From contig NW_003314422.1 of assembly GCF_000143415.4 (NCBI RefSeq), positions 63,956 to 127,955 on the forward strand: 64,000 nt of DNA, written 5' to 3'. The DNA is from Selaginella moellendorffii. Taxonomy: Eukaryota > Plantae > Lycopodiophyta. The translations under genes were made by a program, and so were the position numbers. The notes under the pieces were generated by a model, which ran no database searches, was not told where the DNA came from, and was given only the letters and a program-made list of their open reading frames with translations. This document shows, one piece after another, positions 25,563 through 46,200 of this stretch (within the stretch, counting starts at the first letter, position 1; the number at the start of each line of letters is the position of its first letter).

Positions 25563-28500
25563 TTCCTTTCTCTCTCTCTCTTTCCCTTGTTTTGCTTCTG
25601 ATCCTGATCTAACTAGAGCTTTCTATCGAGGAGACGAGAAGAATGTAGAGCTTAAACTACAAGAGGCGTAAGAAACACTCGAGACTGGAAGTCTTTATAT
25701 ATCCTCGATTGATTTGGCGCTGCTGAACAGAGAGTGAGTCTAGAGAAAGAGAAAGAGTGCACAGACAACATGAGCTCTACGCATTCTCAGGCGGTCAGGG
25801 GACAGGCGGTCTAGCTAGCATTAGAAGGACCTGGGAACTACACTTAAATGCAAAACATCCATGCTTTGTACTTAAGTCTCCTGGTTTAAGTAGTCGGTCA
25901 GGTGTTGGCCTAGATTTTCACCAGTCTTCCAGATTTCAAAATCTATCTTTTCTTGAAAAGAAATCTTACCTAGTATGGATTGAGACGTGTGTCCATGGTC
26001 GGCATGCTCACACTGTCTTGGAAGAAGGGTCCAACGAGAGGAAGCCAACACATTAGAGAATCATACTTCTAAAGAAGGGTATTATGGTGTTATTCCACCT
26101 GTAATTAATTCTCGATTTTACGAATTTAAGTTAAACTAGCATAAATATTACTTTATTTCAAACAATTTTGAATTTAACTATTGTGTGATTATGTAAATGA
26201 TAATGGATATACTTGGAATATTCTTGGGTATTCTAGTATATTCTTATGTTTATTATATACATATTTAAAACTTATAAAAGTTCTTAAGCTCTAGCATATT
26301 TTACAATCTAATGGTTTTGATATTAATCTTCTGTTTATAAATTATAAATATTCTTATAATTTCTTGTAGTGTTTTAAATTTCAATGGATAAAAATATATT
26401 TTTTTTTGCATTGAGGCTTCCTTATGGGCAATTGCAAATTTGAAGTTGAGGGATCATGTTAGGGTCTAGTGGAGCTCAGTATTAAACTTTTCTATGCTGG
26501 ATGTTGAAAGATGTAAATGCAATGTCTATAAGAATTCTTAATTAAAAATTCACATCTTCTTATGCTCACAGGAATAATCTCTAAATTGAAATCTAAGTAT
26601 GTGCTTTAAAACCATTCAACATTTCCTTTGGATTCTCACATCAACTTTCTCTATTTCTTGCCTGGTGAGCAATCTCTATTACAATTTGGACACGTTCAAG
26701 CAATGTGGTTATAAGAACAACTAAATCTATATATCTAGCAAGGTGAAAAAAGTATTCAATCCTTGTTTGTAGAAATTTAATGATTTCTTTTACAAATCCA
26801 TTATTTTTTCCTAAATTACTGATCAATTTGTAAATTTAAGTATAAAATATTTTAGATCTTGATAATAGAAGAATTTATATAACTGGTATAAAAATACTAG
26901 CATATTGAATAAATTTTAATAACAATTTATCATTTATGTCATAATACGTAATATCATACTCCCTTATCTAAATCTACTTTTCATATCTAGCATCTAGGTG
27001 TCATATATTCTTTTTCTAGAATATTACTTAGGATTATGCTTTTGATCTAATGGTTGAAATTTAAAAATTCAAAACATGTCAAACACTTCAATTTGACACT
27101 CTAATCAAGTTAGGTTAATACCACTGTTTATTTTGTACTTTTTAGCTTGCCAAGAATTGGGTGTGCAATAACAACTAAATCAATCAAGTAGACAAGATCA
27201 AAATCTTCAAATTCCACACATAGGTGTTACCTACCTACAAGTAAGTATAGACACCTTTACTTTCTTTATTTCCAAAGACAATTGCTATTGTAATTGTAAT
27301 GGAGCTAGTGTGCTTGGTGATTGATTGTCCTCAGATGGATGGATTGGATGGATATGAGAATTGGTAGTAAAAGCATGAGGAGTTATACCATATGCTATAA
27401 ATGCCACTATCAACTAAATTTGATTGTTCAACTACAATTTCATAGCATTGAGCAATCACACTAATTGCTGCTCTAGAGTCAAAAAAGGAAGAGGCTATTG
27501 CTCTATCATAAAGATGAATAAAAAGAAAAAAAAAAGCAAAAAAAAATAAATTGAAAAAGCTATAAGAAAAGCTCAATTTAAATAAAATCCTAAATCCAAG
27601 CACTCCTCAAGGACAATCAAAATTGCCCCTTCCACCAATGTGAGTGCATAGAAGATAGATTGGAATATAGAAATGTGCATATTAATTAGCCCAAAAACCT
27701 TAGTTTATATACAAAAGCAAATGGTCCAAATTGAAATCAATTCACTACATTAATATTAGTATATGGCATCATAACTGTACACTTTGACCATAAAACACAA
27801 ATTAAATACTTAAAATATTTTTTATTTGTGAATGACAATGTTTATTTATTTATCCATCAACTTTTCTCTATTTTGAGCTTGTATTAAAGTCATTGATTTT
27901 ATTCTCTATAGCCAAGTCAAGATGCTCTAGATCCTCCTTCCAATTTAGCTAAACATGCAATTTGACCAATCCAAGGACAAAGTCAGTCAATCAAAATTTT
28001 CAAATTCCATAGCACACCCATAGGTATTACATACCTATAAGTATTGGCTTTTAGTAAAGACACCTTTACTTTCTTTATTTCCAAAGATAATTCTATTTGT
28101 CGCGAATGTGACTTCGGTTATCAAAAGTTACTTATCGGTCAGTCCTTACGGACTCTCTTTCTTTACTGCTACGACGGCAGAAGGTCAGTATTGCTGGACC
28201 TGTTATCAATCTTCGTCTAAGCTAGTTGAGAAACTGGTCTTCATGTGTGCACTTGACCAAATGAGCATAAGGAAGGAATTCCTAAGTGTGTATTTAGTTA
28301 AACATACTTGACCTGGTTAGAGAAACTCATTCGTTGACTTGCACTTGCTAGTGTTGGGAACCCCCGCGATATTGAACTTGGTCCCTCAATATTTGCTAAA
28401 TGATAGCTTACCATGTCTGCCAAACACCCTCGCTATCATGCCCTTAGCATTAGTCTCAATTCGGTCCCAAATGTTATTTATGAAAAGTGTCTAGATTTGC

Positions 28501-31500
28501 TCATTTGGCATATTTACGGAATATAGAGATTGTATTCCAATACCAAGACCAACACGCAAAACAGAGCCAAACAGAGTCTACTGCTATTTCAACATACCGG
28601 TGGCCTAAAGTGAGGATATGGGTACTCCACTAGCTAACATGGAAAGTTGCTCTGTAGTCTGGTTCCGTCACTCCTTGGCTCCATGCTTAGGAGTTTGGCA
28701 TTGTTCCTTTGTTTAGTGGCCCAAGGCCATGAACCTCGGGTTTTGCACCACTGTCCTTTGGACACATGGCATATAACACATGGCATGTGTCACGTGGCAT
28801 AAAAAGGGTTAAGGTTCTGCTTCGTGGTGTTATCCTATGGTAAATCACCATAGGATAAAGGGTCAAAACCACGTGCGCTACATTTGGTATCAGAGAGTGA
28901 GTCTCGGTGAGTTTTATCCAATGAGACTGGGCAACTAGTCTCGTTGCATACGTAGAGATGAAAATGATAATCCGAGTGGGTACATGTTTGGGTGTAAGGG
29001 CTTCGCATTCGTTTTTTGGGTATGGATTTTGGTTACCTTTCGTACCATATTGCATGAGCTTGCTCTTGGGCTCACTAGAGGGATTGTTGTTCCATTCGCA
29101 TGAGTTTGCGCTTGGGCTTGTGAGTGAGGCACATTAGCACAAGTTTGAGCTTGGGCTCATGAGTGAGGTGCATTAGCAACTCAAGGTTGCACTTTGAGTT
29201 GGCAGGATTAATGTTAGCCTATCAGTGGTTCCATGAGTTGTTTCAATGGTTCCATGAGTTGTACCTTGTGCCATGGGTGAAAGTAAACCTTCCCTGGGTT
29301 TGTTATGAGTGGTAAATAGGCTGGTCCGTAGCTGTTTAGCACAGCACTAGTGGATCCTTCCTAAGCATGATTACAAGTGAATCAACCAAGACTATAGAGA
29401 TTAGTCTATTGGTTCAAGTTGTCATTGCCGTGCTCTCTCATAAACTTTTCTTGGATTGGACCGAAAGTAGTGTGAAAGCAAGTTTGAGGTTTAGTCAAAT
29501 ATGAGACCGAAAAGAGAGTCATCGGGGACGAAAGATCAAACACGAAAATCATTTCCTCTTTTTGGAGAGATGATTTGCAACAAGGTGTGACTCATTGCTT
29601 GTATTCATATTATGTAATCAAGAGTTCTTACCTTAATGCATGTTGGAAATGATGGTCTTACAATTGGCAAGTTGTGGGATGGATAGTGGTGAAGCGCTAT
29701 ACCATTTTGTCTAGGCTTGCTATTGGAAAACTTGGGTTGTAATGCTTAATTCTTTTCCGGGACTTTACTATTGCCCCTTGGGTAGCTTGGTGTTAGATTA
29801 GTTTTGAGTTTGGTTGAAAAGAGAGTGGCATGAATTTGTTTGTGTTGTGAACAAAAGTTAGTGATATTGAGTGTTGTAAATCTCTATTGGTGGGGTGTGG
29901 CATTTATGTTGCATTTTGTCGAATCAAGTTGACACTTGATACTCACATAAATCTTTGTAGTAGTGACATGGGCATTGCATAGTGTTGCTTGATTGATGAT
30001 CAAGACATTGTGATTTTTCATATCATATCTATGTGATAATGAGTAATGTGTTTACAAAGTTGCTTGGTTAAACAATGATCAACCCCAATGTGGTTGATGG
30101 TGAAACTAGTTTACTTGCAAATAGTAGCATTGTAGTAACTTTGACTGGATTCCTGATGGTGATTCATTATACTAAGCTTAAGTTAGTTCCTTAGTTTCTT
30201 GAGTTAGCCCATTGAGGTGTTGGAAAAGGTTATAGCATTCACTTGCTATGGCTTATCAATTAATCCATTAACACTTGGAGTAGATTGTTAGATGGAAAAT
30301 GTGTGTAGTTGAGGCATTGATATTGCTAGCACTTGTGTTAGTGGAAGTGGCATTGTTGTTTTGAGTGATGAGGAATTTTCCTTAGAGCTTGATTTTCCAT
30401 GTCATTTTTCTTGTTAATGTTTTGGCTTCACATTGGATCTTGAAAGTGGTAGAAGAAGAGTGTTAGTGCAATATGGATATCTGAAGATATAATCTTCGTG
30501 ATCAAGCCTTGGATGTTCATTTTGCATTTTGCGGATATCGGTGTTGGATGTTGGAAAAATGGGCAAAGATGTTCGAGGCTTAAACATACTATGGGTCATG
30601 AGAATTTGTGTTGAGGTGAACCTATGTGAAGTTGTTAGTAGGAGGAAGTTGGTTAAGTCTTGAAAGTTTGTATTTCTGGACTGAGAGTCATTCTTTCTCT
30701 AGGATGGAAAAATTTCCACAAATTTTCTTAGATTTATCCAATGGATAATTTATTGATCATTTTGTCTGAAAACCATTCCGATTTTGTAAGCTGGTACAAA
30801 CTAGTGAAGGGCTTGGAGTTGGCTTCGGTTAGCTTAAACCTTAGTATGTAGTTTGTATGATGTGGCCCAAAAGGGATGCTGACTTTTGGGGCTAAAGTAA
30901 TTGAGTTGGATAGAGTCTAGAGTTGGTGTAAGAAACTGGCCATTGCACTTTTCCCAGAAAGGTGACCCTTGTGTGTTTCTTTTATAGCATTGTGCTTGGT
31001 GGCAGGTTGCACTTTGCATTTAGTTAGACTCTATGAGAGTAGTGGGCTCTCACTGATCTTGACTTAGTCTTGGTGGCCTTACGCCTTGGCTGAGGATGAT
31101 GATGTCTAACTTAGTTGTTTGTAGTTGAGATGTTGGTACTCATATTATAGCTTTGTCTAAATGGAGGTTGTGTACCAATATGAATCCATCTCATGGTCAT
31201 CACTTTAGTTTCGAAGTGTTGATCATGCATAGCTAGCTTCTTCAAGGCATGCTTAAAGTTATTGGCTAAATGCATTGGTGTGCTTGTCACGGTTGAGTTG
31301 GATTTGAGTAGTCATTTAATTCATGTTTGTCCATGAACCTTTATCTCATACTTGGGGTATTACATTCATGTTAGATAAGTGTATGACTCGATGACGTGAG
31401 TTTAGTGCTTAGGTCTTGTGGAAGGCAAGTTGAAGAGTGATTGTTGGTTGCTTGACAACTAATGATTGCTTGTAGACTTCATCGAAGACTGTGACATTTG

Positions 31501-32054
31501 CTTCGCTCGATGATGATGTAGTAGTGATAAGTTTGCTTTACTGGATGGTGTTGCGGAGGATCGTATTGTTAGACTTACATGGGTTTTCCATGTTGGCATA
31601 TTGACTCCACCTAAGCTCTATTTCGTTAAAGTGGGAATTGTCATTATCCCACTTGTAAAATAAGGTTTCCAAACCTTTATATAGTATATAAATATAACAA
31701 AATTCAACTGCATTGAGGCACATGCCATTTTATTTTAAACAAGGAAATGTCTACTCAATCACTTCTCCTCCCCCTGCCACTGCTTCACCTCTCTCTTCTC
31801 CTTGTCATTGTCGTCCAATTTCTTTCCATCCTTTTAATATTGGTTCAGTTGCTCCGAGTCTAGGTAGAGCCCAAGTCCCCATTCAATCTTTACTTTCCCC
31901 TTATTAATAAAACAACTTCGTAGACTTCCAATAACATGCTGTAACACTTCTAGTATAATGCAAATCCTCTCAAAGAATTGTCTTTTAATATTAATACAAT
32001 GGCATGGAACCCCATGCCATAATAAGTTACATTTTTAAATAAATACATGCCATC

Positions 32055-35000
32055 TCAGACTGTTATTTTTTGCCTCCAACGCCTATACAATAATCTTGGA
32101 ATTTCATCACTCTCCACACTATTAGGATTTAAACCCAATAGTAATGCCATCTCTTCTCTAATACGTCCACGCTCATGTTCAGTGGTCGAAGAACTCATCC
32201 GGTTGAGCAGATTATGGAGATGCGGATAGTGCTTGGCTAGACAATATACATGCCATAAATGATGACTGGTGTCTGTCCAATCAAATAGCTTTTGATATAC
32301 CATTCCATCTGCCATTTGGTTGATTTCTGCAGCCACCTCCTGGACTGGCCGGTTCTCTATCACCATCGCTCCAAGCCGTTTTGCAAGGTCCCCCAGAACA
32401 TACGGTTTCTTCTCCCTAGTTTCCATACTGCAAGAGATGGGGTGCACTGCATATGTGTGCGTGTTCGCTGCAGTTTTAATCGGCGAGTCATCGATGATGA
32501 GGATTTCACTTGACCTAGCAGTCCGGTTCATCACTACAGCCTCTGGCTTGACGAAGATGGGCTTGCTACCCCTCACATGGACCATAGTCAAGCAATCCTC
32601 CTGCGTTAGGAGAAAGTCAAATGGTAATATTACTCGCGTCTGATCGTGCATCATCTGTAGCAACGTTAATGCATTGTGGCGCATCATGGATGTCCAAACT
32701 CCCAATTGCAAATTGAACCTGGCCCTCTGTTTTAAGTGTCGCATGGTCATTATTAGATCCCGCAGTTTCTCCCGTGTGATTAATGTGAATCTGTCTCTTT
32801 TGACCAACTTGCGACTGCAGGCTTTGGAGGGTGCAGTGACATTCGAGGACGAGCCACGCTCATGGGAGAAAAGGACACCGTTCAGATCAAAAATGATACA
32901 GTACCTTCGCCGTGACTCTGAAATGAAATGCGTCAGCATAAAAAATGGTACAAGTCAATTTTACCATCTACAATATTAGCGAATGGTGCTCCCGATGGTC
33001 GTTGAGAGGGTTTTGGTCGAGGAAACGTGAAGGGCGGAAATACTCTCCTCTGCAATGTGGGGTCAATCGCATCCGATGGTGTGTGGGCACATGCCATTTC
33101 AGCTGTAGACTCTGGTACAACTGGCTCAACAGTGGCATGGGGTGGTTCTGATGGCGTGTGACCACACGCCATTTCAGCTGGTGCCTCCGTTGGCAAAGTG
33201 GACATGACCGAACAGGCAGCAGGGGCGGTGTAGGGAGGTTCCAACGGCGCGTAGTCAGACGATTGGGCACATGTTGAGTCCGTTGGAAATGAGGATACGA
33301 CCGGCTCGGCGGCTAGGGCAGCCTTATGCGGGTCCAATGGCGCCTGGTCACCGTCAGTTGGATACGTGGACAAGATTGACTCAGTGGTATGGGCAGCATC
33401 AAGTGGAGCGTGGTCAGCTTGCTTAGCGTTGATATGGATAGTAGCCTCCACCAGCTCTGATGACTCTTGCAGGCAAGTAGAGTCCACTGGCGGATCCATA
33501 TGCATGTCCAAATATCTCCCTTCGATTGAGATGGTATCCTCCCTACTGGCTACTAAAAACAAACTCATTAGCACATTGAATCGACTATACTGTATTTACC
33601 ATCAACTGCTATTGAGGAACTAGGACCGATATCACTTGGGCGCACTGCTGATTCTGAAGGATTGGACATACGTTTCGACCCTTTCTTGGCACTATCCTTC
33701 CTCGACACTAAAGGCTAGAGTTTGTATCTTAATTCAACTGAATAATCTTTACTTACCATTTGCTTTGCAACCTACATGGACAATGGTAAAAGGTTAGGAA
33801 TGGATGTACTATTATTTACCTGATGGTTTGTCTTGTATGACCTTCCTCCGCTGCTCTTTGGCCACCTCAGGCTGGCCATCGTCGTCATCATCGTCGTCGT
33901 CGTTATTGTGATTGTCACCATTGTGAGGACCATCCAAGTCCTCTTCGTCCTCCTCTTCTTCGTCCTCCTCTTCTTTGTCCTCCTCTTCGTCCTTCTGCTC
34001 TTCCTGCTCATTATCTTTCTCTGGCTCCTCATCCCCCTCCTGCATTTCTTCCATAGGCTGCTCAGGCTGGATGGCTTGTTCTTCTAGGACCATCTTGGGA
34101 AAATCATCTGGCCGAGTCTCCATCTCAAAATACAAGACATCCATAGCCTGTTTTAGTGCGTGACCTAGGACCGTATCCTCACCCGATTGTCTTAACATGG
34201 TTTCTGCACGTTCTTGCACCCTTCGAAGATGACGAGATGAGAAAAACGTGGCCCTGACTTGAAAAGCATCCCTCATCCATTGTACCTCTCCATTGAGATT
34301 GGGGAAGGGGAGTCTGCCATAGGAATCTGAGTCAGGAGGTGGTGACCGCGAGGCATTACCTATCATCTTTTCGTTGCCCTTCTTCCTTTTCGAATCAAAC
34401 GCCTCTTATCCCGACGATTGTCCAACGTGCTTTCGCTTTTTATGACCACTGTCAGTTTGAGCTTGGCTGGTGCTTGCCTGTTTTGCCTTTGAAGAAGTGT
34501 CTCCTGCAAGGAATGGCATGAGACCACACGCCATTGCAAATATAATTTGTACCTCCTTTTTTCCTATTGCTTGTCTGTTTGTCCTTCTTTGACGCGCCAC
34601 CAGTGCGCTTTTCAGTCCTCGTGTCTGAATATTCACAACGATCTATAATCAAAATGGCGTGAGGCCTCACGTGACCTTACCTTGTGCAGGTTGTGAGCTC
34701 GGCCCAACATGGGTATCTTCAACAGTAGCTGTTAACGCCGTTTCAGCATCTGGGGGTGGCCACGCTCCTGCATACAGAGCTTGTGAGATAACATTTAAAC
34801 TTAAAGTGCGTACTCACCAGGTTCGCAGAGAAGATACTGTTTTTCTTTGGCAACTGTAATTATATGCTCCATTGAAGTCACCTCTTCAATGGAGTTTGTC
34901 ACCGCAACACACGGGACACCCTTGAGTAGTGCGGCTCGAAAGAATAGTCCGCCGCAGTTGTACTCGACAACGCATTTGCCCTTGGAGTCGGAAGCAGGTG

Positions 35001-37374
35001 ACCCACCCGCTATTGCGTTGAAGACCCAGCTGAGCATTTCCCATGCTGCACTTGGAGCTTTCTCTGGATTCGAAAGCTCCATAGCCGTCTTCAGTTCCTC
35101 AGGCACGGGTAAATTGACCTCCCTCAGATCAATTCGATCGGCCTTGTCGAACGAAGCTGGGAAGTCACTCTAGTCCCACTCTGCTGCAGGACCAATAACA
35201 AGGGCGAGTGTGAAGATGCGGACATTCGTCGGTATCTTCTTCTTAGCCATTATCCCATGGATCTCCTGCATCTCCTTGCCTTTCAACCGAGCCTTCACCT
35301 CGTTCAAGGCCTTCCAGAACTTGTGATAGGATTCGGAGTCGTAGATCATATAGTGGACTGAAGATTCCACCTCCGCAAGTCCCACCATTAAGTCAATGAT
35401 GGAGCTGACTTCGTCTGCATGAGTGATCTCCTCGTTTGTGAAGTCCATCACACAAAAGATGTTCTTGACCTGCTCATCTCCACGGGAAACGATGCTCCTC
35501 CACCTTTGATCCTCATCCGAATTCACGTATACCCGGTAAGGTTCTCGATAGGCCTCTGCTGCGGGGTCGAGCTGTTTCTGAAGCCGGCGGTCGACATCCC
35601 TTTTAATGAAATTTGGATACTGATCCAACTTCTCAGCTTTATTTTTCGTGGCATCCCGCAGCAGATCGATGAACTTGGGGCCCCCCTTCACGTACTCGTC
35701 GATGTCTTCATTTGACAACTCCAGCTCTTCCATCATCTCTTGCGTGGTGTCAATGCTCACCCTCTCCACGGCCACTTGCTCGAAGATCCAATCCTTTAAT
35801 AGCGCACGAGCTCTCAGAGTCGTGCACAAGTCCTCGTATGTCACAATATGGCCGGGAGTCATTTTGGTCTTGTTGAAGACTACCTCACCACGTAGAAGAG
35901 CATTAGCCACTGTCAGAAGGTCGTCGTCGTCTAGAGACCGTGAGAAACGCAAGGTGTTGAGCTTCAAATCATTGGGCTTCCGGCCGTCCTCCACACCCAT
36001 TGAGTTTAGCAACTCCCCGTCATGGTACCTCCTCAGCACATCTACCCATTTGTCAAAAACAACTTTTGTCGCGAGTAGAATGTTATGGATGCTGAGTGTG
36101 TCATTGACCCCCAGTGTTTTCGAGAGAAGACTCGAGAATTCCTGCAATGGAAATGGCGTGAGGCCACATGCTATGCCACATGCAATGAGGCTTACCTGCC
36201 AGGCGCTAGTTGCTAGTGCACGTCCTTGTCCTGGTTTTTGTGGCTTCTTCAGTTGAACCCAGAGCTTCTGTGTTCGTGCCAATGTCTCGTGCAGACCTGA
36301 TTTGTAGCACGTTTCTTGCTTGACATTCTGCGCGTGGGAGATGGATATGATAGATCGGAGGGGCGAGTTGCCTTTTATCAGGCGGACAACTCTTGTCTTG
36401 AAGACTTTCTTCACCTCCTCGCCCACCATAATATCCACAACTATCTCTTGCATCGCCAAACTAGAATGCTGCCCGGAGACGGCATAGAACCGGATGTTCT
36501 GATCGTCCAACACCTTCCTATTGATGAAGTCTGGAAACCTCGTTTCGCCCTTCATTGTTCGGTAGTAGGGGATCACGTCTGCGATGTCGGGTGTTACTGG
36601 ACTTGCCAGCATCTTCTGCTTCAGTTTCTCCACCCACTCATCAGATACTAGCCTGTGGTTGTATTTGCTTTGGATGTCGATATGGCTCACGTCGATTGTA
36701 TATACTTTGTTGGAATAGTAACAAGTACTATTATCTGCGACGATTTTTGCTGCCTCTTCTTGCTCTTTCTGCTCTTTGCGGCTCTTCTTTTTGGTGGGTG
36801 TAGTGTTCGAACCCGAGGCAATGGCATCACCGAGTAGCTTCTTTTTTGGAGCAAGAGAGTCGGACGTCGGCTTGAGCTTGACCACCCTTTTCTGCTTCGG
36901 GGTAGTTTCCAGATCGACCCCCTTCCCCTTCGCTTCACGAACTGGAGGCACTCTCAACGGCTCAATGTTGGAATATAGTTTTTGAACATCGCCGTAGGTG
37001 AGGTCCGTGGATTCCATGTGATCTTCATAGACCCGCAGCGTCTTTGAAATTGTGGGCCTCCTGGACAACCTCTCCCTAGCTCCCTCTAGGAATTCCTCAT
37101 AGCCGCTGCCCCCTTCCGGGAAGCCGCTAGGATATGCAAGGTGGATCTTGAAGGCGGATGCTGTCTCTACCACAAGTGCCAGTCCATATTCTTGCATGGA
37201 ACTGCATGGAGTGTTTGTCACTTGGATGAGGATCCCCATGCATTCTTTTCTCCCACCATCTGTGTTGTACAGCCTCAGATCCTCGCCTTCCATCCCGAAA
37301 GTCCAACTGGTGAGCTCCTCCCCCTTCTCTGCATCCACATTGACAGTGGCTGGAAGAAGAACGCAATTCCTCGC
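32055..37374 (-). pseudogene. Transposon cargo gene, at least 9 exons, ~1640 codons: ParB/Srx-like domain, degenerate MTase-like region, acidic/repeat linker, FCP1/NIF HAD phosphatase; two premature stops
   Basis: Exons 37374-36196, 36141-34818, 34767-34681, 34624-34553, 34503-33820, 33771-33757, 33707-33600, 33552-32965, 32917-32055. All introns are GT-AG, 47-56 nt and frame-preserving. In-frame stops TAG (35172-35170) and TAA (34408-34406). True start uncertain. Confidence 0.7.
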
Positions 37375-39909
37375 CTGTTCAGAAATGCACAACAATTAGA
37401 GCTGACAGATGAAAAGCTAGCAGCTGGAAATAACGTAAGGCCACACGCCATTCACCACTGCATCAGATGTCTTGAGGCTGCATCCTAAGATGGCGTGAGG
37501 CTACACGCCATTTGTAACCGGACTGCACTCGAGAGCCCAATCGGTGCATGCCAATGTTGCTACTGAATGGCATGTGGCCTCATGCCATTTTCTACTTGGC
37601 CTAAAAGACTTACCATTTGAAGCCGAATGGAGGCCGTGACAATCGAGGCCGGACTCGCTGGCGAATGTGCACTGTGTGTGCAACAGATCGTAGCAGCAAG
37701 GCTACTCTGCCACTTACAGTTGGAGAGTGGTGTTGAAATCTCCCGGGACGCCAAGTGGGCTGCGTGTGGGTGGCGGAGTGGGCGGCGGAGTTGGCGGCGA
37801 AGTTACAAACTGGGTGTGTTTTGAAGTGGACACCGATGCACATGAGCACGATGCGAGCGCGAGTGTGATGCAAGCGCGAGTGGACGCCGATGCACACGAG
37901 AAACCTGTAGAGAAGGTAGATGAGCGCGAATGTGAGTGTGATTGCGAGTGGGAGCGCGATGCGAGTGCGAGTACGATGCAAAATGCAAAACCTAACCTCA
38001 CACGCGCGAAATGTCACGACGGTTGGTAATCCCGCCACGTCATCATTCCTCGGACTTGGGTGCCACCATTAATTTCTGGATCGCCGCGCGCATGCATGCA
38101 CGTGAAATCCAAAAGAAATCCGCAACGTCATCATTCCTCGGACTGCATGCACGCGAAATCCAAAAGAAAGATCATGATTGGGATATCATTTAATACCCTC
38201 GCTATATTTATACCATGCATGATTGGATATTCCAAAGCATCTTGTATTTCCACGCGAGATTTTTTTGAGTTTTCTGGAGATCCAACCGTTAGATCGCAAC
38301 TAGATTTTACAGAATGGTATACAATGTCTTTCTTGATGACCCTGCAAAGAAGCATCTCGATCAGACACCACATGAGACCACACAAGCCTTACAATGTTTC
38401 AGGGGCATTTGCCATAGATCCGACCGTTATTTTGCTCCAAGATTTTACAGTTTGGTGTGAATTGACCTTTCCATCGACACTGCAAAGGGACATCACAATC
38501 AGATGTGGGATCACAAGAAACTAACTTCACTAACTCTGGTTTCACCAAGATCTACATAAGGAGTTATGAAATGAAAGGACCCTCTCTATTGAAATGTGTT
38601 TATGGTCCTAGGGGCATTGTGACATATCAAAGGATTTTGCATCAAGTTCTGTATTTGCATGTTTATCAAGCTACTGAATTGCTAAATCCTAAACCCTAAA
38701 CATGTGGCAAATGCTGCGTGAAGAAAGATGCCCTTTCTAGGCAAATGCTGTAAGAGGCAGATGCCGAGCAGATGTATCTCAGGCTAGCGAAGGGGACAAA
38801 CGAAAGTTAGCTATAAACATGACGGGATGCAAATAGATTACTAGGCTGGTCCTGCGAAAATCAAAAACCATAATTGAAAACATTGAAAATGCAAAAAGAA
38901 AGGTTTATAATATTTTTGAATTTTAAGCAACCAAAGGAATGTAAGTAGGGCATGTGTTTGTAAGTTTAAAAATGCCTCAACCACTTAAATTCCCAAGTAA
39001 ATAAAGCTGTTTCTATTTTTGGTACAGGTAAACTTTATAGCGTGTGGGCTCATGCAATTTTGAACCCAAAAATGCACCAAAAAATGCTCGACTAGCATTA
39101 TTCTTTGAATGGCGTGTGGCCTTATATTGCCATAAATGGACGTACACACACAGCATAATTATTCCTTTACACGGCGAATAATCTTGGTGCGGATCGCTGA
39201 CATGGCATGGCAAAGTTCGAATCACTGACATGGCACAGCTGGATCGAGGCAAGGACATGATGTGACAAAGTTCAACCTCCGACAGTAAAGTCTAGAAGCT
39301 ACTCAGTTTGAAATTTGTCAAAGGAATCATAAGATCTGGTTTGTCAGAGGATTTGATGTGACGTTCAAGCGTGTGTTATTTTTGAATTCTCGAACTCATT
39401 CCTAGGTCTATCATTTTTGTGCGCCGCGTTCTTGGTTCCGCTGAGCGCAGTGAGCGCTGCTTGTGTAAGCGGCGTTGTGAGCTGTGGTTTATGCGTCTAT
39501 GAGCGGTTGAGGCATTGCGAGCGCCATTGCGAGTGGCAGTTTGTGCGAGCGGCGCTACGAGCAGTTGCGGTGTTGCGAGCGGCACTACAAGTAGTTGCGG
39601 TGTTGCGAGCGGCACTGTCTTTGGTGTGGCTACCGCTTCCTCTTGATATTCGGCACTTGTGCTTCCTGGTATGTTCACCATGGAATGGCTTAGGACCACA
39701 TTTAGAAATGGCATGAGGCCACATGCCATCTTGGGCCCTTGCAATTTCATGGCTAACGTATTGTCATGTATGTTTTTACTTGCCTGCAGCTGTGTGTATA
39801 TCAAGATGGCATGAGGCCTCATGCTATTGAGGTTGTTTGGTATGTTATGATTTAGGCCATTCTCCAATCATTTTTTGTATGGTCTTAACTTCTTTTCTAC
39901 ACTTTCAGA

Positions 39910-42808
39910 ATGGCCTCCGCAAGTGCGACGCATGTTCCTTCCGTGGATCTTAAGAACCGTGCTACATGGATTCAGGCAAAGGTGTTTCTAAACAACCCCG
40001 AGGGGGAGGTGGTAGCTGAGGGTTTAGCCACAGTTGTCGATCCAAGAGATGCGGTTGCTAATCAAGAATTGGGCTGGGATGATATTGGAGTTGCGATTTT
40101 AGAGGTTGTTGACACAGAAGAAAACAGTCTGACTATTGGAAGCATTGTGCGGTGGAAATTGAGGCACTTAGTGTTTGAGAATGTGAAGGATTCACAATCA
40201 AACACCACTACAACTGATGACAGAACATCTCTTCATGGGAAAAGAAAGTACACCTTCCTAAAGCGCAGCCAAAGGGATCTGAGCAACGAACCGAAAAGGC
40301 AGAAAATGGCGATGGAGGTTCGAATGGTCTCGACAGTTGCTTGTTGCAAGAGGAGGTGCTGTCAACATGTTGATTGGGATGCTATTGAAGAGGAGAGAGC
40401 AAGATACAAGACATTGTAGTGGAAGGTAGCTCGCAATTTTGTGTATGAGGCATTACGGTCATCTGTTGATGCTTCAGAACATCAGGTGGGGGGCATGGTC
40501 TTCCAGAGGGGTTTGGTCTGCATGAAGGCATGGAGAATCATTTATGGAGTCCCTCGAACCACATTCTACAGAATCAAAACTGAGTTCGAGGAACAAAGGG
40601 TTCAACAGGCAGTCCATGGGAACGACGGTACTCACAAAACTAGGGGTTATGTTGTATATGGAGAGGCAATCTTCAAGAGGTTTGTCGAGACATGTAGCGA
40701 GCAACAACCACATAAAACCCGCCTCTTGGAAGATGGAACTCGAGACACCCAACGAGTTCTCCCTTCCATGTATACCAAGGGGGCCATATTGGAAGATGTG
40801 AATCGGGAACTCCAGAGTAATGGCTACAGGAAGCTGAGCCAATCTTGATTTAGTAGATTGTGGAGCAACAGGTTCAGGGATGTGAGTATAGGAAAGTACT
40901 CCAGCTTTTCAAAGTGTGACGAGTGCACTGCTATCAAAATGGCTTTGTCGAAGAATTCTTGCATCGCTCAAGAGCGAGAGACGTTGGTTAGAAGGCGGCT
41001 CGACCACAACATCGAGCAGAGAAGCTGCAGGACTGCATATTATCATAACAGGATTCTCTCCATGGAGAGACCTGACTCTTACCTCTGCATCATCCACGAC
41101 AAAATGGACCAGAAAAAGACGTGCTTACCTCGACTCAATCCTGCCCCCAAGGCAATCTCTTCATCCATGCAGCTGCCTGTGTCTCTGTTTGGCATAATCG
41201 CTCATGGGCATGGTGCCCAGAACTATGGGAACTTCTTTGTACCTCTATGGCGTGGCGGCGGTGCAAACATGATGATTGCGTCCCTAGCAAAACACTTAAG
41301 GTCTCTGCAAAGTGTGCAGACTGAGCTGAACGGCCAACCCTTGCATAAGGCCCTTGTCGATCGAACCCCATACAGGGTTCAGCTGGAGGAGGAGCAAAGG
41401 CTTGCAGTATCGAGTGTGGCCCCATGCCATCCCAGTGAATATGTTGGCCCTCAGATTGTAGGGTTATCACGTGAGGCCTCATGCCATTCCGACGAGGCTG
41501 GTCGCCCGGTGAATGCACAGCCTCATCCAAATGAAGCAGAATCTCAAGGAAGTTCTTGCGGCCGATGTGGCCTTCCACCCCATCTTCTGCTCCAAACAGA
41601 CAATGCTGGCAGTGAGAACAAAAACACGTACGTCTTTGCGTACTTGGCGATGCTTGTTGCCAAAGGCATATTTGAAACGGTTACACTTGGCTTTCTCATG
41701 GTTGGGCACACTCATGAAGACGTCGATGCCATGTTCAGTCACCTGGCAGAGTCCCTCCGACGATCCAATGTCCTCACCCGCCCACAACTTTACGATGAAT
41801 TCCAAAATTGCATCAAAGGCACTGTTGAAGCTGCACTTGTGACAGAGGTTCCAGACTTTAAGGGGTTTGTAAGAGGCTACATCAGGGACGGATCCGAAAC
41901 GCTGATTGGCCACTCCAAGCCTCTTCAGTTTCATTTCAGCATGCGTGACGGTGCTCAAGTGATGAGGTACAAGATGAGAGAATGGGACACAGTGTGGCTG
42001 CTAGTGGACGGCATTGAACTCTTCAAGAGAGATCCCATAACTGGGGAACCTATGATTCCTCAGGGTCCCCCACGGCCGATGCACCCGGATGGACTCAAAG
42101 ACCAAGAAAGTATAGTGGCCGAGATTAGACAGCATATTGCCTTCTGGAAGAGGGGGTTGGTGTTTGGTGGAGAATCCTATTTTCAGAGGTGCAAGACTTT
42201 GATCGAATACTGGGAGAAGATTATATCTGCTATCCAAAATGGGCCGGTTGTATATGAAGATTTGGAAGAGTCCTTTTGGCCAGAACCCAGAGCACTAGAT
42301 AGTAGCGGAACAATGTCCTCTGGAAATGCAGTGACAGATAACGATGTTGAGGATCACTATTGTGGGCCGAGGAACAAGAAGCCGGATTCAGCATTCAATC
42401 CAGTATAGGTCTGCAAAGGAATGGTCGTACTTGTCAGACCCAGTAATAAAAAACAAATGATATGGGTGGGGCGCTGCATCACTGATGCAGAGGAGGACGC
42501 GGAAACTAACTCCTTCAATGTAACTGTGGAGTGGTTCAAGCCAAGTTCCGGATATACGAAGGATTGCCTAGAAAAGAGATGGGTGCTGAATCCAAGGGAT
42601 CCCAATATGAGCATATCGGTGGATAATGTTGTGCATGGTTGGATGCGGAAGCAGAGTGCCACCATCACCTTGCCAGACCATGCAAGAGATGCAGCAAGAG
42701 CATTCATAACCCAGGTTCAAGGTGAGATTCATTAATATTCCTTTACTAAGTTTCTAATGTATTTTATTTCAAGGTGAACAATCCGAATCTGAATCAGAGG
42801 AGGCGTGA
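39910..42808 (+). pseudogene. Sola-related DDD transposase (GHTHEDxD family), one reading frame broken by three in-frame stops
   Basis: ORFs 39910, 40441, 40858 and 42421 share one frame (stops at 40417, 40846, 42406). Motifs FSKCDEC, IIHDKMDQ, LQTDNAGSENKN, FLMVGHTHEDVDAMFS. Probable last intron 42722-42773. Confidence 0.8.
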
Positions 42809-43015
42809 TGGCATGTGGCCTGAGATGATGTGACATATGCATTTACCAATCACATGTGCATAAATCTAATAATATGGCGTGTGGCCCATATTAATGGCAC
42901 ATAAACCCATATTGTGGGCTTACGTGCTTTATGTACCATCATTCCCTTGCAGCGTGTGTGTTGGTTTCCTTTTATAACACAACGAACTCCATATTTTAGG
43001 GTGAAGAGCGTTTTC

Positions 43016-43273
43016 ATGGCAAGCACAAAATCTATAAGTGAGGCAGAAAAGGAGACGGAGAAGGAGATAGGTGAAGATGTAGAATATATAAGTCTTCCAA
43101 ACTCTCCGTACTATACTCCAGGTGATCATTTTTCTGAACAAACGGCAATATTAACAACTATCGAGAACGCCCCAGTAATGTCAGAGACAACAATCCAAAG
43201 CAAAACAACTGACCCGGAGAAGGATGATAGTACTGCTGAGAGTACCAAAAAGGAGGTGTCCACTAGCGCTTAG
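43016..43273 (+). CDS. Possible short acidic ORF inside the TIR element
   Basis: MASTKSISEAEKETEKE... preceded by an AG acceptor-like site; no homology recognised. Confidence 0.25.
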   Translation: MASTKSISEAEKETEKEIGEDVEYISLPNSPYYTPGDHFSEQTAILTTIENAPVMSETTIQSKTTDPEKDDSTAESTKKEVSTSA

Positions 43274-46200
43274 GCTTATAATGGCGTGTGCCCTCATGCC
43301 ATTTACTTGATCACCAAATACCTTTTTCCCTTTGCACTAGTATATCTTAATACCGGTCTGAGAAATAGAATAGCATGTGCCCTCAAGCCTTTTACTAAAT
43401 CACCTTTGACAGAAATGCAAGCCTCTATGTCGTAAAAAAAAGGTACTAGAGAAATTCCTTAATAATATGAATGTTATTTAGTTTCATGAAAATACACTAA
43501 GGGTCAAAGGAGTTAAATGACTTCTCCAGACTAGCAATGCCTCTTGCTACACCTTCACAATTAGATTCGTTAGAAAAAGATAACATTGAATAATATCTAA
43601 ATGTTCTCACCATTAAGTTATATGTCTGGCTAATAGGAATGACGTTCATCTTGGAAAGCTCACCACACACTCAATGAACAAACAAATAATGTGTGCGCAC
43701 ATGCCATCACTCTTCTTTAGCTTCAGATTCGGCTTGTTCACCTTGACAATGAGATTTATTATACAACCAGATGGACTCAGTCTGGACACAAAGTCATCGC
43801 GCTAGTCACCATGCCCCAGATATGTCTAGCCCCTGGACAAAAAACATATAATTTCACGTCATTTTCAAATACTTGAAAATTTGTACCTATTCCCATTTTA
43901 CTGAATAAATCCCACTTTAACGAAATAGAGCATACCTTTATCAATACCATTTAGTTATGTTTCGTTTATAGTATTGGATTTCTTTGAGTCTTGGATGTGG
44001 TGAATCAGTCCTTGATGAAGTGTTATTTGTAACTAAGTTTTGTTAAAGGATTGGTCTCGGATGCTGGGTAAAGTATCTTCAACCTTGGTTAGCTTAGTTG
44101 CTGGAAAGTTTTGAGTGATGATTCACTCTTGCCTTCTTGTAGCTTTATTCTGATGTTAATGGCATTGAAGTGATGCTTTGTCGTTGACATTATTGGTGTT
44201 GAGATTCAAGTGAGATGAGATGTCTCTCTGTAGGATTGATATTGAGTCTCATTAATCTCGATGCAATTAGTGTTGATGCTTGAGCTATAGTTTTATGTTA
44301 TTGGCATTTATGCATTTGCTAGTTAGCAACTGTATTGACGTTCAAACGAACTGAGTGGCAAGTTTGAGTTAGTTGTGTTCTAGACGAGATTATTTAGTAA
44401 GGGTTGAGCTTTGGCTTTTCCTTAAAAAGTGATTCAATCGTGGACTATACTAGCTTTACGAGAGGAAGAGTTAGTGATCGATATTAGAATGTTTGAATCC
44501 TTATTGGATTTGAGTTGGAATATATCGATTATGGATGATTCTTTTTGTGCTTGTTATGAAGTGAGTTACATCTTGCTAAAGATAGATTCATAGAGGATTG
44601 TTTAATAATCACTTGTTGAGCATAACTTCATTGTGTTTGGCTTTTGGATTGATGCAAATATGCTCTTCATTAGCTTTGGCATTATGAAGTTTAGATTATG
44701 AATGTGTTGAAGAGAATATTGTGGGTTATATCATGATTTCTTCTTTAGCATTGAAGTTAGTTCCTACAAGACTTGTGATCATTATTAGGCAAGACTTAGT
44801 TATATGCTTCTTTAAGCTTTTGGTTCTTTGAGTTTTGTGCTTATTGTTTCATTTGTTAAAAGATATTGGGGAAGACATTTTGGCTCATTCGCTTCAATGT
44901 TGAAGTTGGCTTTTGCATTTAGCAATTATTGGTGATGATTGACTATCATCTAGGATAATTGATTATCCTTGTTAGAGGTTTACTTGATTGTTGTTGATAT
45001 AGAATGACTCGTTGTTCTTTGGGATGGTGGATTCTTTCATTGATAATGATTATGCATCTCTTTCTTGATGGGATGATTGATGATCTTTTATGATAGTTTG
45101 CTGTTCTCTTTGATGGCTTATGGCTTTTCGCAATATCACATGTACTTTGTGGTTTGCTTTGGATTGGTCTCTTGGGTTTGAGACATTAGTAGGATGTTGC
45201 TGACACTTGCTTGAGCAACTCTGGTTCCTTAGTATTATTGACTGGGATCTATTCAGATTGGCTTCTATGATAGTTAGCATAAATGGGTGTTTGTTGGTCT
45301 TACTGCATTCATTTTGTTTTGTTGATTATTGCTCGAGTTAGTTTTGAAAGGTTGGGATGTTATTTCTTTTGGGTGATACATTCATGAGCAATGTGTTTGT
45401 CAGTCAATGATACTTTGTGTTCTTTGAGTTATCTTTAGTAAGTTGGTTGGAATACTGTCTGCCATCTTTAGTACTTAAGTTTTATCATTGAGTTTTTTTT
45501 ATGATATGCTAGCTATTGAATTTTGTTGGATGGTGAATTCTATATTTTCCAATGATAGTGATCTTGGTGGTTCCTATCCACTAATATTGGTTTATCGGAT
45601 GATAACTTACTTGGAATACTTTCGTATTCTAATGTAACATATATTTGCTGATAATTAAGTCTCTAAGATATCATTGTCTATGACTTTGATATTGTCCATC
45701 TATTGATCTTTAAGTTTAGGCCAGTATAGGCAGACTGACTTTGACACTTCATGTGCATGGTGAAATCTCTAATCATGGGGTAGCTACTATCAACTAGTCA
45801 CATAACCCGCCTCTTTGTCGATGTTCCTTATTCTGTTAAAAGGGCGTGACCGTGTAAACAACTCTAACTACCTGTTTACAGTAGTGTATCTAAAACTTAT
45901 CAACGGGTTTAGTTTCTTTGCTCATGAGGGTTGGGGCCTTTAGCTTCTCTCTCTATGCCACATGCGGGCAGGGGCGTATCACACTTTTGTAAGTTGGGTG
46001 ACACCCAGAGCAGCAAGGGTGGCTGACTCTATTGGTCATTTCCTTGTCGGCGACGGCTGGAAGGTGTCTGAGTTAGTAGCACATCTGCGTTAGACAAAAA
46101 GGTTACCTTAACTCATTTAAGTTGGTGCATTTCTCATATAGTGTGAATACTGTGAACTTTTTCTGGAGTTGTTTCCTTGGCAGTATTCTAGACTCGAGTG

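What the first reader, a model, noticed from the sequence alone, without database searches (positions are those of the whole stretch)
32055..37374. Seven separate ORF fragments splice into one ~1640-aa protein, including a 15-nt microexon
Eight GT-AG introns of 47-56 nt (one phase 0, then seven consecutive phase 1) join all minus-strand fragments without a frameshift, including microexon 33771-33757. Only two in-frame stops interrupt it. An ORF track would miss the link between the N-terminal ParB-like part and the C-terminal phosphatase.
Basis: partly seen in the sequence, partly recalled or inferred. Interest (0 to 1): 0.8.

Follow-up and report, generated by a model that had tools for sequence, protein, structure and literature searches.

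The report
Decayed multi-exon gene inside a transposon
The spliced reading frame exists, but it is a broken copy of a passenger gene (ParB-like, methylase-like and phosphatase-like parts) carried by a 12.3-kb DNA transposon of the clubmoss Selaginella, and only its first intron and first half are backed by relatives.

Summary
The arithmetic is correct. Eight GT-AG introns of 47-56 nt join nine minus-strand exons (37374-32055) into 4920 nt, with internal stops TAG 35172-35170 and TAA 34408-34406. A predicted structure confirms the ParB/sulfiredoxin fold. Pfam confirms a weak NIF/FCP1-type phosphatase domain. The window is Selaginella moellendorffii, where ~58-nt introns occur in host genes. The gene lies inside a 12,323-bp transposon (31612-43934) with 28-bp inverted ends, about 16 copies of a 24-bp palindrome, and a divergent DUF7869 transposase gene carrying three in-frame stops. 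A 97%-identical sister copy fixes the right end and reads through two of those stops, so this copy is decayed. Stop 1 sits inside a methyltransferase-like domain that relatives read through. Intron 1 is conserved in position in distant relatives. Introns 2-8, the 15-nt microexon and the link to the phosphatase have no outside support. The small exons are all multiples of three, so the frame does not need them. The model has no start codon. A rival model is a ParB-methylase-like gene ending just after exon 2 plus a separate phosphatase gene. The domain combination on a eukaryotic transposon appears undescribed. Interest is moderate.

The parts
31612..43934 (.). Whole element: a 12,323-bp TIR DNA transposon copy holding two divergent genes and all copies of the palindrome
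   Evidence: The ends form a 28-nt inverted repeat, 93% complementary. Homology to sister copy L005 stops exactly at 43934. The palindrome family occurs only between 31706 and 43396.
31612..31639 (+). Left terminal inverted repeat, TAAGCTCTATTTCGTTAAAGTGGGAATT
   Evidence: It is the exact reverse complement of the right end of sister copy L005.
43907..43934 (-). Right terminal inverted repeat
   Evidence: TA lies at both junctions in the window and at the one junction seen in L005.
36196..37374 (-). Exon 1 (393 codons, no ATG at its start): poorly modelled N-terminal part, a K-rich linker, and the ParB/Srx-like domain
36325..36717 (-). ParB/sulfiredoxin-fold core (residues ~220-350), motif F-Y-A-V-S-G-Q-H-S
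   Evidence: pLDDT 80-90. Foldseek top hits are Noc 7ol9 (E 4.7e-5), ParB, KorB, PadC and sulfiredoxin. G-Q-H is invariant in 9 family members; the Arg of the DGQHR/GxxR motif is Ser or Thr.
36142..36195 (-). Intron 1 (54 nt, phase 0, in-frame and stop-free) containing one palindrome copy (36152-36175)
   Evidence: Its position is conserved in L002, L003 and in the ORF ends of P0002, P0003 and P0006. The corresponding introns of L002 and L003 hold those loci's own palindromes.
34818..36141 (-). Exon 2: helical middle region plus the methyltransferase-like domain, interrupted by stop 1
35170..35172 (-). In-frame stop 1 (TAG, codon 717)
   Evidence: It lies where P0001, the L002 ORF 4713-5948 and the L004 ORF 2846-4327 are continuous.
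34897..35064 (-). Beta-class N6/N4 DNA-methyltransferase-like motif X + motif I (KAPSAAWEML...VVEYNCGG...)
   Evidence: The family profile hits only M.RsrI in the PDB (E 0.006). Relative L004 hits Pfam N6_N4_Mtase at E 8e-5, 23.1 bits, below the 26.7 cut-off. L004 also hits six PADLOC type II MTase models. No DPPY-type motif IV was seen.
32055..34767 (-).
   Evidence: Codon signal is present only for exons 5, 8 and 9. There is no outside support.
34406..34408 (-). In-frame stop 2 (TAA, codon 920). It is 40 nt upstream of ATG 34366, in a stretch without coding signal
33757..33771 (-). Proposed 15-nt microexon
   Evidence: Flanked by ...ATGTAG and GTAAGT. The frame does not need it: a single intron 33819-33708 or 33819-33553 also keeps it. 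Codon score is 0.1.
32457..32903 (-). NIF/FCP1-like HAD phosphatase domain; motif I reads D-L-N-G-V and motif IV reads I-I-D-D-S-P
   Evidence: Pfam PF03031, E 6.1e-6, 26.4 bits, cut-off 21.8. Sequence.
39910..42735 (+). Intronless transposase gene (DUF8039-like N-terminus, DUF7869 core with conserved D...DN...E, BAH-like C-terminus); in-frame stops at 40417-40419, 40846-40848 and 42406-42408
   Evidence: Pfam DUF7869, E 4.4e-43. Stops. The sister ORF P0026 is continuous across the first two. Conserved acidic residues. The BAH-like hint is weak (E 0.29).
31706..43396 (.). About 16 copies of the 24-bp palindrome AATGGCRTG-N6-CAYGCCATT (9+6+9). Starts: 31706, 31998, 33075, 33150 (both in exon 8), 34512 (intron 4), 34653 (intron 3), 36152 (intron 1), 37429, 37489, 37566 (upstream of exon 1), 39036, 39707, 39805 (upstream of the transposase ATG), 41465, 43280, 43369
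   Evidence: 13 matches against 0 expected in shuffles. Family D1/D4. Hairpin energies down to -14.9 kcal/mol.

Best explanation
Region 32055-37374 is a decayed copy of the second, intron-containing gene of a 12.3-kb terminal-inverted-repeat DNA transposon (31612-43934) in Selaginella moellendorffii. The element's other gene (39910-42735, opposite strand) is a DUF7869-type DDE-like transposase.

The passenger gene encodes a ParB/sulfiredoxin-fold domain followed by a helical region and a degenerate beta-class N6/N4 DNA-methyltransferase-like domain. That pairing is known from phage and plasmid ParB-methylase fusions. In this element it is most likely continued, through short lycophyte-type introns and low-complexity linkers, into a NIF/FCP1-like phosphatase domain.

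Shown here: the frame and introns, the two folds/domains, the element's borders, the sister copy, the conserved intron 1, and non-conservation of stop 1.

Inferred: the gene once made a single nuclear protein serving the transposon, acting on the element's DNA or chromatin or on the transcription machinery rather than on cut-and-paste chemistry. This copy is dead: it has two nonsense codons here, three in the transposase, and no start codon. The element-wide palindromes are cis sites, most simply for the transposase.
For: - The splice model is reproduced.
- A host gene in the same window has a 58-nt intron.
- Introns 5-8 are 29-33% GC against 46-54% in the exons.
- ParB/Srx fold.
- NIF domain.
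- Methyltransferase-like motifs.
- Relatives are collinear across intron 1 and across stop 1.
- TIRs and palindromes.
- Sister copy L005 is 97.3% identical and ends at 43934. It is open where the window's transposase has stops, and it has its own 7-bp deletion.
- Other DUF7869 loci have their own 24-bp (9+6+9) palindrome arrays.
- The species is identified.
Against: - No relative has a NIF domain after the methylase-like part.
- No transcript data exist.
- Codons ~850-1000 (exons 3-5a) show no coding signal.
- The model has no ATG.
- The ParB-like gene and a DUF7869 gene are seen together only in this window. Relatives L002-L004 show no transposase within reach, and L006-L008 show no ParB-like gene.
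- The methyltransferase assignment rests on sub-threshold hits to one ~50-residue region. The structure model of that domain was poor (pLDDT 44).
Confidence: 0.7

Rival explanations
1. Two genes, not one. The ParB-methylase-like gene ends just after exon 2: with intron 2 retained, TAA 34803-34801 closes the frame 6 codons on. A separate phosphatase gene starts at ATG 34366. 'Introns' 3-4 and stop 2 would then lie in an intergenic spacer that carries two palindromes acting as promoter-proximal sites.
For: - P0001 ends at about the position where exon 2 ends.
- In the Calypogeia locus L003, similarity to the relatives ends at ~12130 and the locus's palindromes begin ~270 nt later.
- There is no coding signal between codons ~850 and 1000.
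- Palindromes lie 146 and 287 nt upstream of ATG 34366. This resembles those 55-192 nt upstream of exon 1 and 105-203 nt upstream of the transposase ATG.
- No relative has a NIF domain.
- The intron 4 donor GTACAA is weak.
Against: - Only about 430 nt separate the two units.
- The whole stretch can be kept in one frame with three well-formed short introns and a single stop.
- Relatives L002 and L004 continue for more than 200 residues past the methylase-like domain in the same ORF, into acidic low-complexity tails like the one in exon 5.
Confidence: 0.3
2. An intact, expressed host gene whose two stops are sequencing errors or are read through.
For: There are no frameshifts in 4.9 kb, and the large exons keep codon bias.
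Against: - The locus lies between transposon ends confirmed by a second copy at another site.
- The neighbouring transposase in the same copy has three stops, and the sister copy reads through the first two.
- There is no start codon.
- No protein from this locus is in a collection that does contain other proteins of this scaffold.
Confidence: 0.03
3. The chain is a reader's artefact: unrelated ORFs stitched together by chance GT-AG pairs, with no gene downstream of exon 2.
For: Many in-frame GT-AG joins are available (21 for one junction). The small exons carry no signal.
Against: - Exons 5, 8 and 9 are long and open (182+, 195 and 287 codons) and have positive codon scores on the same strand.
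- Exon 9 has a Pfam domain above threshold.
- The introns are AT-rich, with GTAAGT/GTAAAT donors and YAG acceptors, and match the host's size class.
Confidence: 0.03

Closest known systems
Prokaryotic and phage ParB-domain + N6/N4 DNA methyltransferase fusions (Pfam ParBc + N6_N4_Mtase; the phage ParB-terminase-locus methylases discussed in PMC4738411)
   Same: The domain order is the same: a ParB/Srx-fold domain first, then a beta-class methylase with motif X and motif I at its C-terminal end. The family profile's only PDB hit is the beta-class enzyme M.RsrI.
   Different: This one is eukaryotic, intron-containing and transposon-borne. The ParB motif has Ser/Thr where the Arg of GxxR/DGQHR sits. 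No DPPY catalytic motif was found. Scores are below family thresholds. A phosphatase module may be appended.
FCP1/SCP1-type (NIF) CTD phosphatases
   Same: It matches Pfam NIF above threshold, with HAD motif IV (IIDDSP) and a motif II Thr in place.
   Different: Motif I is D-L-N-G-V, not DxDx(T/V). A host NIF gene in the same window (5476-6078) also has Asn there (D-M-N-H-T), so this may be a lineage trait rather than decay. The domain is very divergent: it has no PDB sequence hit and only E 0.054 against the host gene.
Two-gene plant DNA transposons with an accessory protein (En/Spm TnpA/TnpD; VANDAL VANC anti-silencing factor). This comparison is from general knowledge, not tested here.
   Same: A transposase plus a second element-encoded protein, and short sequence motifs repeated across the element.
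   Different: The protein families are unrelated. Here the motif is a 24-bp palindrome and the accessory protein is ParB/methylase/phosphatase-like. No function was tested.
GingerRoot DNA transposons of Selaginella (PMC6839031)
   Same: Lycophyte/bryophyte plus animal distribution, TA...TA termini, and sizes up to ~12.9 kb.
   Different: GingerRoot has a 6-bp target duplication, 100-150-bp TIRs and an integrase-like DDE. This element has 28-bp TIRs, no 6-bp duplication (TCCACC against CCTTTA), and a transposase matching only DUF7869, with no rve hit.

Membership tests
ParB/sulfiredoxin (ParB/Srx) fold superfamily | The ParB N-terminal domain / Srx fold | tested here: met
   The AlphaFold model of exon 1 has residues 220-350 at pLDDT 80-90. 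About the first 40 Foldseek PDB hits are nearly all Noc, ParB, KorB, PadC, sulfiredoxin or SbnI; the best is E 4.7e-5, probability 1.00.
ParB/sulfiredoxin (ParB/Srx) fold superfamily | Nucleotide-binding GxxR / DGQHR-type motif with its arginine | tested here: not met
   The family alignment gives an invariant G-Q-H followed by Ser (Thr in P0003). The window reads V-S-G-Q-H-S.
ParB/sulfiredoxin (ParB/Srx) fold superfamily | Sequence-level family match (Pfam ParBc or NCBIfam) | tested here: not met
   No Pfam, NCBIfam or PADLOC hit for exon 1 or for relatives.
ParB/sulfiredoxin (ParB/Srx) fold superfamily | Binding to a palindromic parS-like site; CTP-dependent clamping | not testable with these tools
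   Palindromes are present, but no binding data exist. Palindrome arrays also occur in DUF7869 loci where no ParB-like gene is in view.
Beta-class N6/N4 DNA methyltransferases (Pfam N6_N4_Mtase) | Motif X plus motif I (AdoMet-binding FxGxG) at the C-terminal end of the domain | tested here: inconclusive
   Relative L004 hits at E 8e-5, 23.1 bits, below the 26.7 cut-off. The family profile hits M.RsrI at E 0.006. L004 also hits six PADLOC MTase_II models. The window itself reads VVEYNCGG and gives no Pfam hit.
Beta-class N6/N4 DNA methyltransferases (Pfam N6_N4_Mtase) | Catalytic motif IV (D/S/N)PP(Y/F) | tested here: not met
   It is not present in the window translation or in relatives. The aligned strand ends read MDFTNEE, ADLRRCQ and CDSANGV.
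Beta-class N6/N4 DNA methyltransferases (Pfam N6_N4_Mtase) | Methyltransferase fold of the whole domain | tested here: inconclusive
   The model is poor (pLDDT 44.5). Beta-class enzymes (1nw6, 1g60, 9c3s, 5hfj) appear among the Foldseek hits, but with E >= 0.05.
NIF / FCP1-like HAD phosphatases | Pfam NIF above the gathering score | tested here: met
   26.4 bits against 21.8, E 6.1e-6, profile positions 1-126 of 160.
NIF / FCP1-like HAD phosphatases | Catalytic motif I DxDx(T/V) | tested here: not met
   The window reads F-D-L-N-G-V-L. The canonical host NIF protein in the same window also has Asn at that place.
Cut-and-paste TIR DNA transposon | Terminal inverted repeats at borders that are confirmed by an independent copy | tested here: met
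   28-nt TIRs. Sister copy L005 diverges from the window exactly after 43934. The left border rests on the TIR alone.
Cut-and-paste TIR DNA transposon | Target-site duplication | tested here: inconclusive
   TA is present at both junctions here and at the one junction seen in L005. TA, TWA or none cannot be told apart, and no empty site was available.
Cut-and-paste TIR DNA transposon | Element-encoded transposase with a catalytic acidic triad | tested here: inconclusive
   DUF7869 match at E 4e-43. In 12 diverse members the invariant residues are D (DKMDQ), D-N (LQxDN) and H-T-H-E-D. There is no match to a solved transposase. The family is multicopy in liverworts and present in animals.
Spliceosomal introns of the host | GT-AG, host-typical length and composition | tested here: met
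   All eight are GT-AG and 47-56 nt. A host INTS2 intron at 9938-9995 is 58 nt.
Spliceosomal introns of the host | Conserved position in homologous genes, or transcript evidence | tested here: inconclusive
   Intron 1 is conserved in L002, L003 and the ORF ends of several relatives. Introns 2-8 have no homologous sequence to compare, and no transcript data could be reached.

The most novel reading that the evidence does not exclude
A lineage of eukaryotic DNA transposons has adopted a phage/plasmid-type ParB-methylase module, here extended by a CTD-phosphatase-like domain, as a sequence-specific accessory factor. That factor recognises the element's own fast-evolving palindromes, in the manner of ParB and parS. 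One copy of the palindrome is kept inside the conserved first intron of the factor's own gene in three distant lineages. The factor would use these sites to regulate the element's transcription, splicing or chromatin state, for instance to counter host silencing.
Probability: 0.12. Interest if true: 0.85.

Novelty: new variant of a known kind. Interest (0 to 1): 0.55.

Why it matters
If the single-gene reading holds, this would be, as far as the literature searches here show, the first eukaryotic transposon protein described that combines a ParB/sulfiredoxin fold, a methyltransferase-like domain and an FCP1-like phosphatase. It would point to bacterial or phage partition/modification modules being recruited by eukaryotic mobile elements.

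Independently of that, the work outlines a poorly characterised transposon group: a DUF7869 transposase with element-specific 24-bp palindromes, found in lycophytes, liverworts, cnidarians, amphioxus and sponges.

For genome annotation, it shows that an ORF track or a prokaryote-style gene caller splits such genes. Several database 'proteins' in this family end at an intron donor.

The copy in the window itself is dead and has no expected function.

Tried and rejected
- The word-index protein search with the 741-aa ORF, and with a family alignment, found nothing new.
- A JGI metagenome scan with the F-x-[AT]-[IV]-S-G-Q-H-S pattern found 66 pattern matches but no relative. A first attempt failed because no conserved stretch was available.
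- Direct sequence searches of exon 1, the NIF exon and the transposase against PDB sequences gave only noise.
- The window has no Rfam family, and no second copy of the gene.
- I tested whether the N-terminal domain of the ParB-like proteins is the same as the DUF8039-like N-terminus of the transposases. hhalign gave probability 0.2%, so this is rejected.
- I tested whether the element's NIF domain was recently captured from the host NIF gene 26 kb away. Similarity is only E 0.054, so this is rejected.
- I tested whether the element is a GingerRoot. TIR length, target duplication and transposase type do not fit.
- I looked for a DUF7869 gene beside the ParB-like genes of L001-L004, and for a ParB-like gene beside the DUF7869 genes of L005-L008. 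Neither was found within the DNA available.
- A search for a 5' exon with a start codon upstream of 37374 found nothing significant.
- The structure of the methylase-like domain came out at too low confidence to use.
- Reaching the allelic site on the other S. moellendorffii haplotype was not feasible with exact-protein look-ups.

Full report
**1. The observation**

Nine minus-strand exons between 37374 and 32055 are joined by eight GT-AG introns of 54, 50, 56, 49, 48, 49, 47 and 47 nt. The first intron is phase 0 and the other seven are phase 1. The joined sequence is 4920 nt, or 1639 codons plus TGA. The only internal stops are TAG at 35172-35170 (codon 717) and TAA at 34408-34406 (codon 920).

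**2. How much of this exceeds chance**

Log-likelihoods are +45, +21 and +25, using a model trained on other coding sequence of the window.
- *Introns.* Introns 5-8 are 29-33% GC against 46-54% in the exons. Donors are GTAAGT/GTAAAT-type and acceptors are YAG.
- *Intron size.* A host gene in the window (INTS2) has a 58-nt intron at 9938-9995, so this size class is normal here.
- *Small exons.* Exons 3, 4, 6 and 7 (87, 72, 15 and 108 nt) score about zero. All four are multiples of three, so leaving any of them out also preserves the frame. The microexon therefore cannot be inferred from the sequence.
- *GT-AG joins.* In-frame, stop-free GT-AG joins are common. There are 21 for the exon 8/9 junction alone.
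- *Start codon.* The model begins at an acceptor-like AG. The first in-frame ATG is codon 28, whereas relatives have 40-60 more residues at the N-terminus.

**3. Organism and setting**

The window carries an NB-ARC/LRR gene, an INTS2 gene, a hAT transposase and a Ty3/gypsy element. A 201-aa window ORF (5476-6078, minus strand) is present letter for letter in the NCBI part of the protein collection. Its 90% cluster representative is a Selaginella moellendorffii 'probable C-terminal domain small phosphatase'. The window is therefore S. moellendorffii, a lycophyte known for short introns (the latter from general knowledge).

**4. The locus is a transposon copy**

- *Ends.* A 28-nt inverted repeat (93%) sits at 31612-31639 and 43907-43934.
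- *Palindrome.* A 24-bp palindrome, AATGGCRTG-N6-CAYGCCATT, occurs about 16 times, only between 31706 and 43396. Shuffles give 0 expected against 13 strict matches. Its R/Y variation lies at CpG positions.
- *Second gene.* The opposite strand holds a DUF7869 gene (Pfam E 4e-43). It is one 2826-nt frame (39910-42735) with three in-frame stops.
- *Sister copy.* A search with this ORF found a Logan contig, L005. It is 97.3% identical over 39806-41799, has an internal deletion, resumes at 43800, and loses all similarity exactly after 43934. That fixes the right border.
- *Decay.* The sister's ORF (P0026) has sense codons at the window's first two transposase stops, and it carries a 7-bp deletion of its own. 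Both copies are decaying independently. The window copy has five nonsense codons in its two genes and no frameshift.
- *Junctions.* TA is found at both junctions here and at the one junction seen in L005. The target duplication (TA, TWA or none) cannot be settled.

**5. What the gene encodes**

- *(a) ParB-like part.* Sequence libraries are silent. HMMER against 1.8 billion representatives found 14 weak relatives (best E 1e-7). They come from S. moellendorffii (P0001), the liverwort Calypogeia fissa (P0008), and unnamed metagenome or read-assembly contigs. Their alignment shows an invariant G-Q-H inside F-x-A-[IV]-S-G-Q-H-S-x-x-A-A-K. With that alignment, AlphaFold models residues 220-350 at pLDDT 80-90. 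About the first 40 Foldseek PDB hits are nearly all ParB, Noc, KorB, PadC, sulfiredoxin or SbnI (best E 4.7e-5). The fold is therefore ParB/Srx. The arginine of the GxxR/DGQHR motif is replaced by Ser or Thr.
- *(b) Methyltransferase-like part.* After a helical region comes a segment that looks like motif X plus motif I of beta-class amino-methyltransferases (KAPSAAWEML...VVEYNCGG; ILDFFSGGQ in a relative). In relative L004 this segment hits Pfam N6_N4_Mtase at E 8e-5, below threshold, and six PADLOC type II methylase models. The family profile's only PDB hit is M.RsrI (E 0.006). No DPPY motif is present, and the structure model was too poor to use. I call this a degenerate methyltransferase-like domain. 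ParB + N6/N4 methylase is a known prokaryotic and phage pairing (PMC4738411).
- *(c) Phosphatase part.* The last exon matches Pfam NIF above threshold. HAD motif IV is kept, but motif I reads D-L-N-G-V. The canonical host NIF protein 26 kb away also has Asn at that position. It is otherwise barely similar (E 0.054), so this is not a recent capture of that gene.

**6. Tests of the splice model against relatives**

- *Intron 1.* Several database 'proteins' of the family stop at ...W-K-V*. This is what results from reading into a GT donor placed after the W-K/W-Q that ends exon 1. In contig L002 the next ORF starts at the residue after that point. In the Calypogeia locus L003 the two exons are separated by about 240-270 nt at the same place. 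Intron 1 is therefore old, even though in the window it is in-frame and stop-free.
- *Stop 1.* It falls inside the methylase-like domain. P0001, the L002 ORF 4713-5948 and the L004 ORF 2846-4327 are all continuous and collinear across that position.
- *Downstream of exon 2.* Nothing can be compared. No relative has a NIF domain, and no similarity was found to exons 3-9.

**7. The main rival**

If intron 2 is not removed, the frame closes six codons later (TAA 34803-34801). That is about where P0001 ends. In L003, similarity to the relatives ends at ~12130 and that locus's palindromes begin ~270 nt further on.

Codons ~850-1000 have no coding signal. ATG 34366 follows stop 2 by 40 nt. Two palindromes lie 146 and 287 nt upstream of that ATG. 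This resembles the groups upstream of exon 1 and of the transposase ATG. That pattern suggests a three-gene element in which stop 2 is simply non-coding.

Against this, the spacer is only about 430 nt and can be bridged by three well-formed short introns. Relatives L002 and L004 also continue past the methylase-like domain in the same ORF, into acidic tails like that of exon 5.

I put the single-gene reading at about one half and the two-gene reading at about one third. Either way, the statement that this is a decayed transposon passenger gene with ParB-like and methylase-like domains holds (confidence 0.7).

**8. Palindromes in related loci**

- DUF7869 loci L006 and L007 carry about 15-20 copies each of their own 24-bp 9+6+9 palindromes upstream of the transposase gene: CCCTATGGCTATGTGGCCATAGGG and TAGCTTGGTCTTAGGACCAAGCTA.
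- The ParB-like loci L002 and L003 carry different palindromes: CAACGCGGCGTTG in about 21 copies, and TGCCTCGAGATCGTCTCGAGGCA in about 11.
- In the window, L002 and L003 alike, at least one copy sits inside the conserved intron 1.

The simplest reading is that these are element-specific cis sites of the transposase, because arrays exist where no ParB-like gene is in view. A ParB/parS-like relationship is not excluded. I list it as the novel case at low probability.

**9. Comparison with the literature**

The searches found no description of DUF7869 elements or of a eukaryotic transposon with a ParB-like gene. GingerRoot of Selaginella lepidophylla shares the host range and TA...TA termini. It differs in target duplication (6 bp), TIR length (100-150 bp) and transposase type.

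**10. Verdict**

The feature is best described as a pseudogenised, intron-containing accessory gene of an uncharacterised DNA-transposon family, with an unusual domain combination of apparent prokaryotic ancestry. It is a new variant of a known kind. Interest is moderate. It would rise if transcripts or intact copies show that the three domains are made as one protein.

Noticed in passing
window 5473-6078 (-): A host NIF/FCP1-type small CTD phosphatase gene (Pfam NIF, 167 bits). Its motif I is D-M-N-H-T, with Asn at the position of the second catalytic Asp, the same substitution as in the transposon's NIF-like domain. This ORF identified the window as Selaginella moellendorffii.
   Followed up: partly
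window 63122-63851: A second, different array of 24-bp 9+6+9 palindromes (CCGAGGTTATTTGAATAACCTCGG and variants, 7 copies roughly 100-190 nt apart) runs to the window's end. It has the same architecture as the palindromes of the DUF7869 elements, so it may be the edge of another element of that kind.
   Followed up: no
window 28098-28725 and 46241-47247: The transposon is flanked, 3-4 kb out on each side, by related segments. There is a 300-nt direct repeat (90%), an 81-nt direct repeat (86%) and a 111-nt inverted repeat (89%). G-runs (46821-46875, 47462-47506) and a 23-nt tandem repeat (47233-47413) are also present. This is probably another repeat family or LTR-like sequence into which the element inserted.
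   Followed up: no
L001 10001-11425 (S. moellendorffii GL377575.1), proteins P0001/P0017: A 451-aa paralog covers only the helical and methylase-like parts. It sits among ordinary host genes (ArfGap, VQ, SCAR), has no palindromes nearby, and is present on two scaffolds. It could be a domesticated or relic copy.
   Followed up: partly
window 32965-33552 (exon 8), palindromes at 33075-33098 and 33150-33173: Two palindrome copies 75 nt apart lie inside an open coding exon, each translated as A-E-M-A-C-x-H-T-P-S. They are part of a degenerate ~25-residue Pro/Thr-rich repeat. The extended palindrome ends in ...CCATTTCAG, which mimics a plant splice acceptor. Palindromes end 11 and 8 nt upstream of the acceptors of introns 1 and 4.
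   Followed up: partly
window 39910-42735 (+) and relatives P0027, P0054: The DUF7869 transposases end in a conserved segment (G-x-F-V-L-V-R-P...W-L-G...V-x-W-[WY]-x-P) that weakly resembles the BAH domain of plant EBS (profile against PDB, E 0.29). The family is greatly expanded in the liverwort Riccia sorocarpa and is present in Exaiptasia, Branchiostoma, a sponge and Tribonema.
   Followed up: partly
window 2155-5322 (+), 15922-17985 (-), 51419-55306 (+): An NB-ARC/LRR resistance-type gene, a hAT transposase with DUF659, and a full-length Ty3/gypsy polyprotein ORF (gag-protease-RT-RNase H-integrase, 1295 aa without stops).
   Followed up: no
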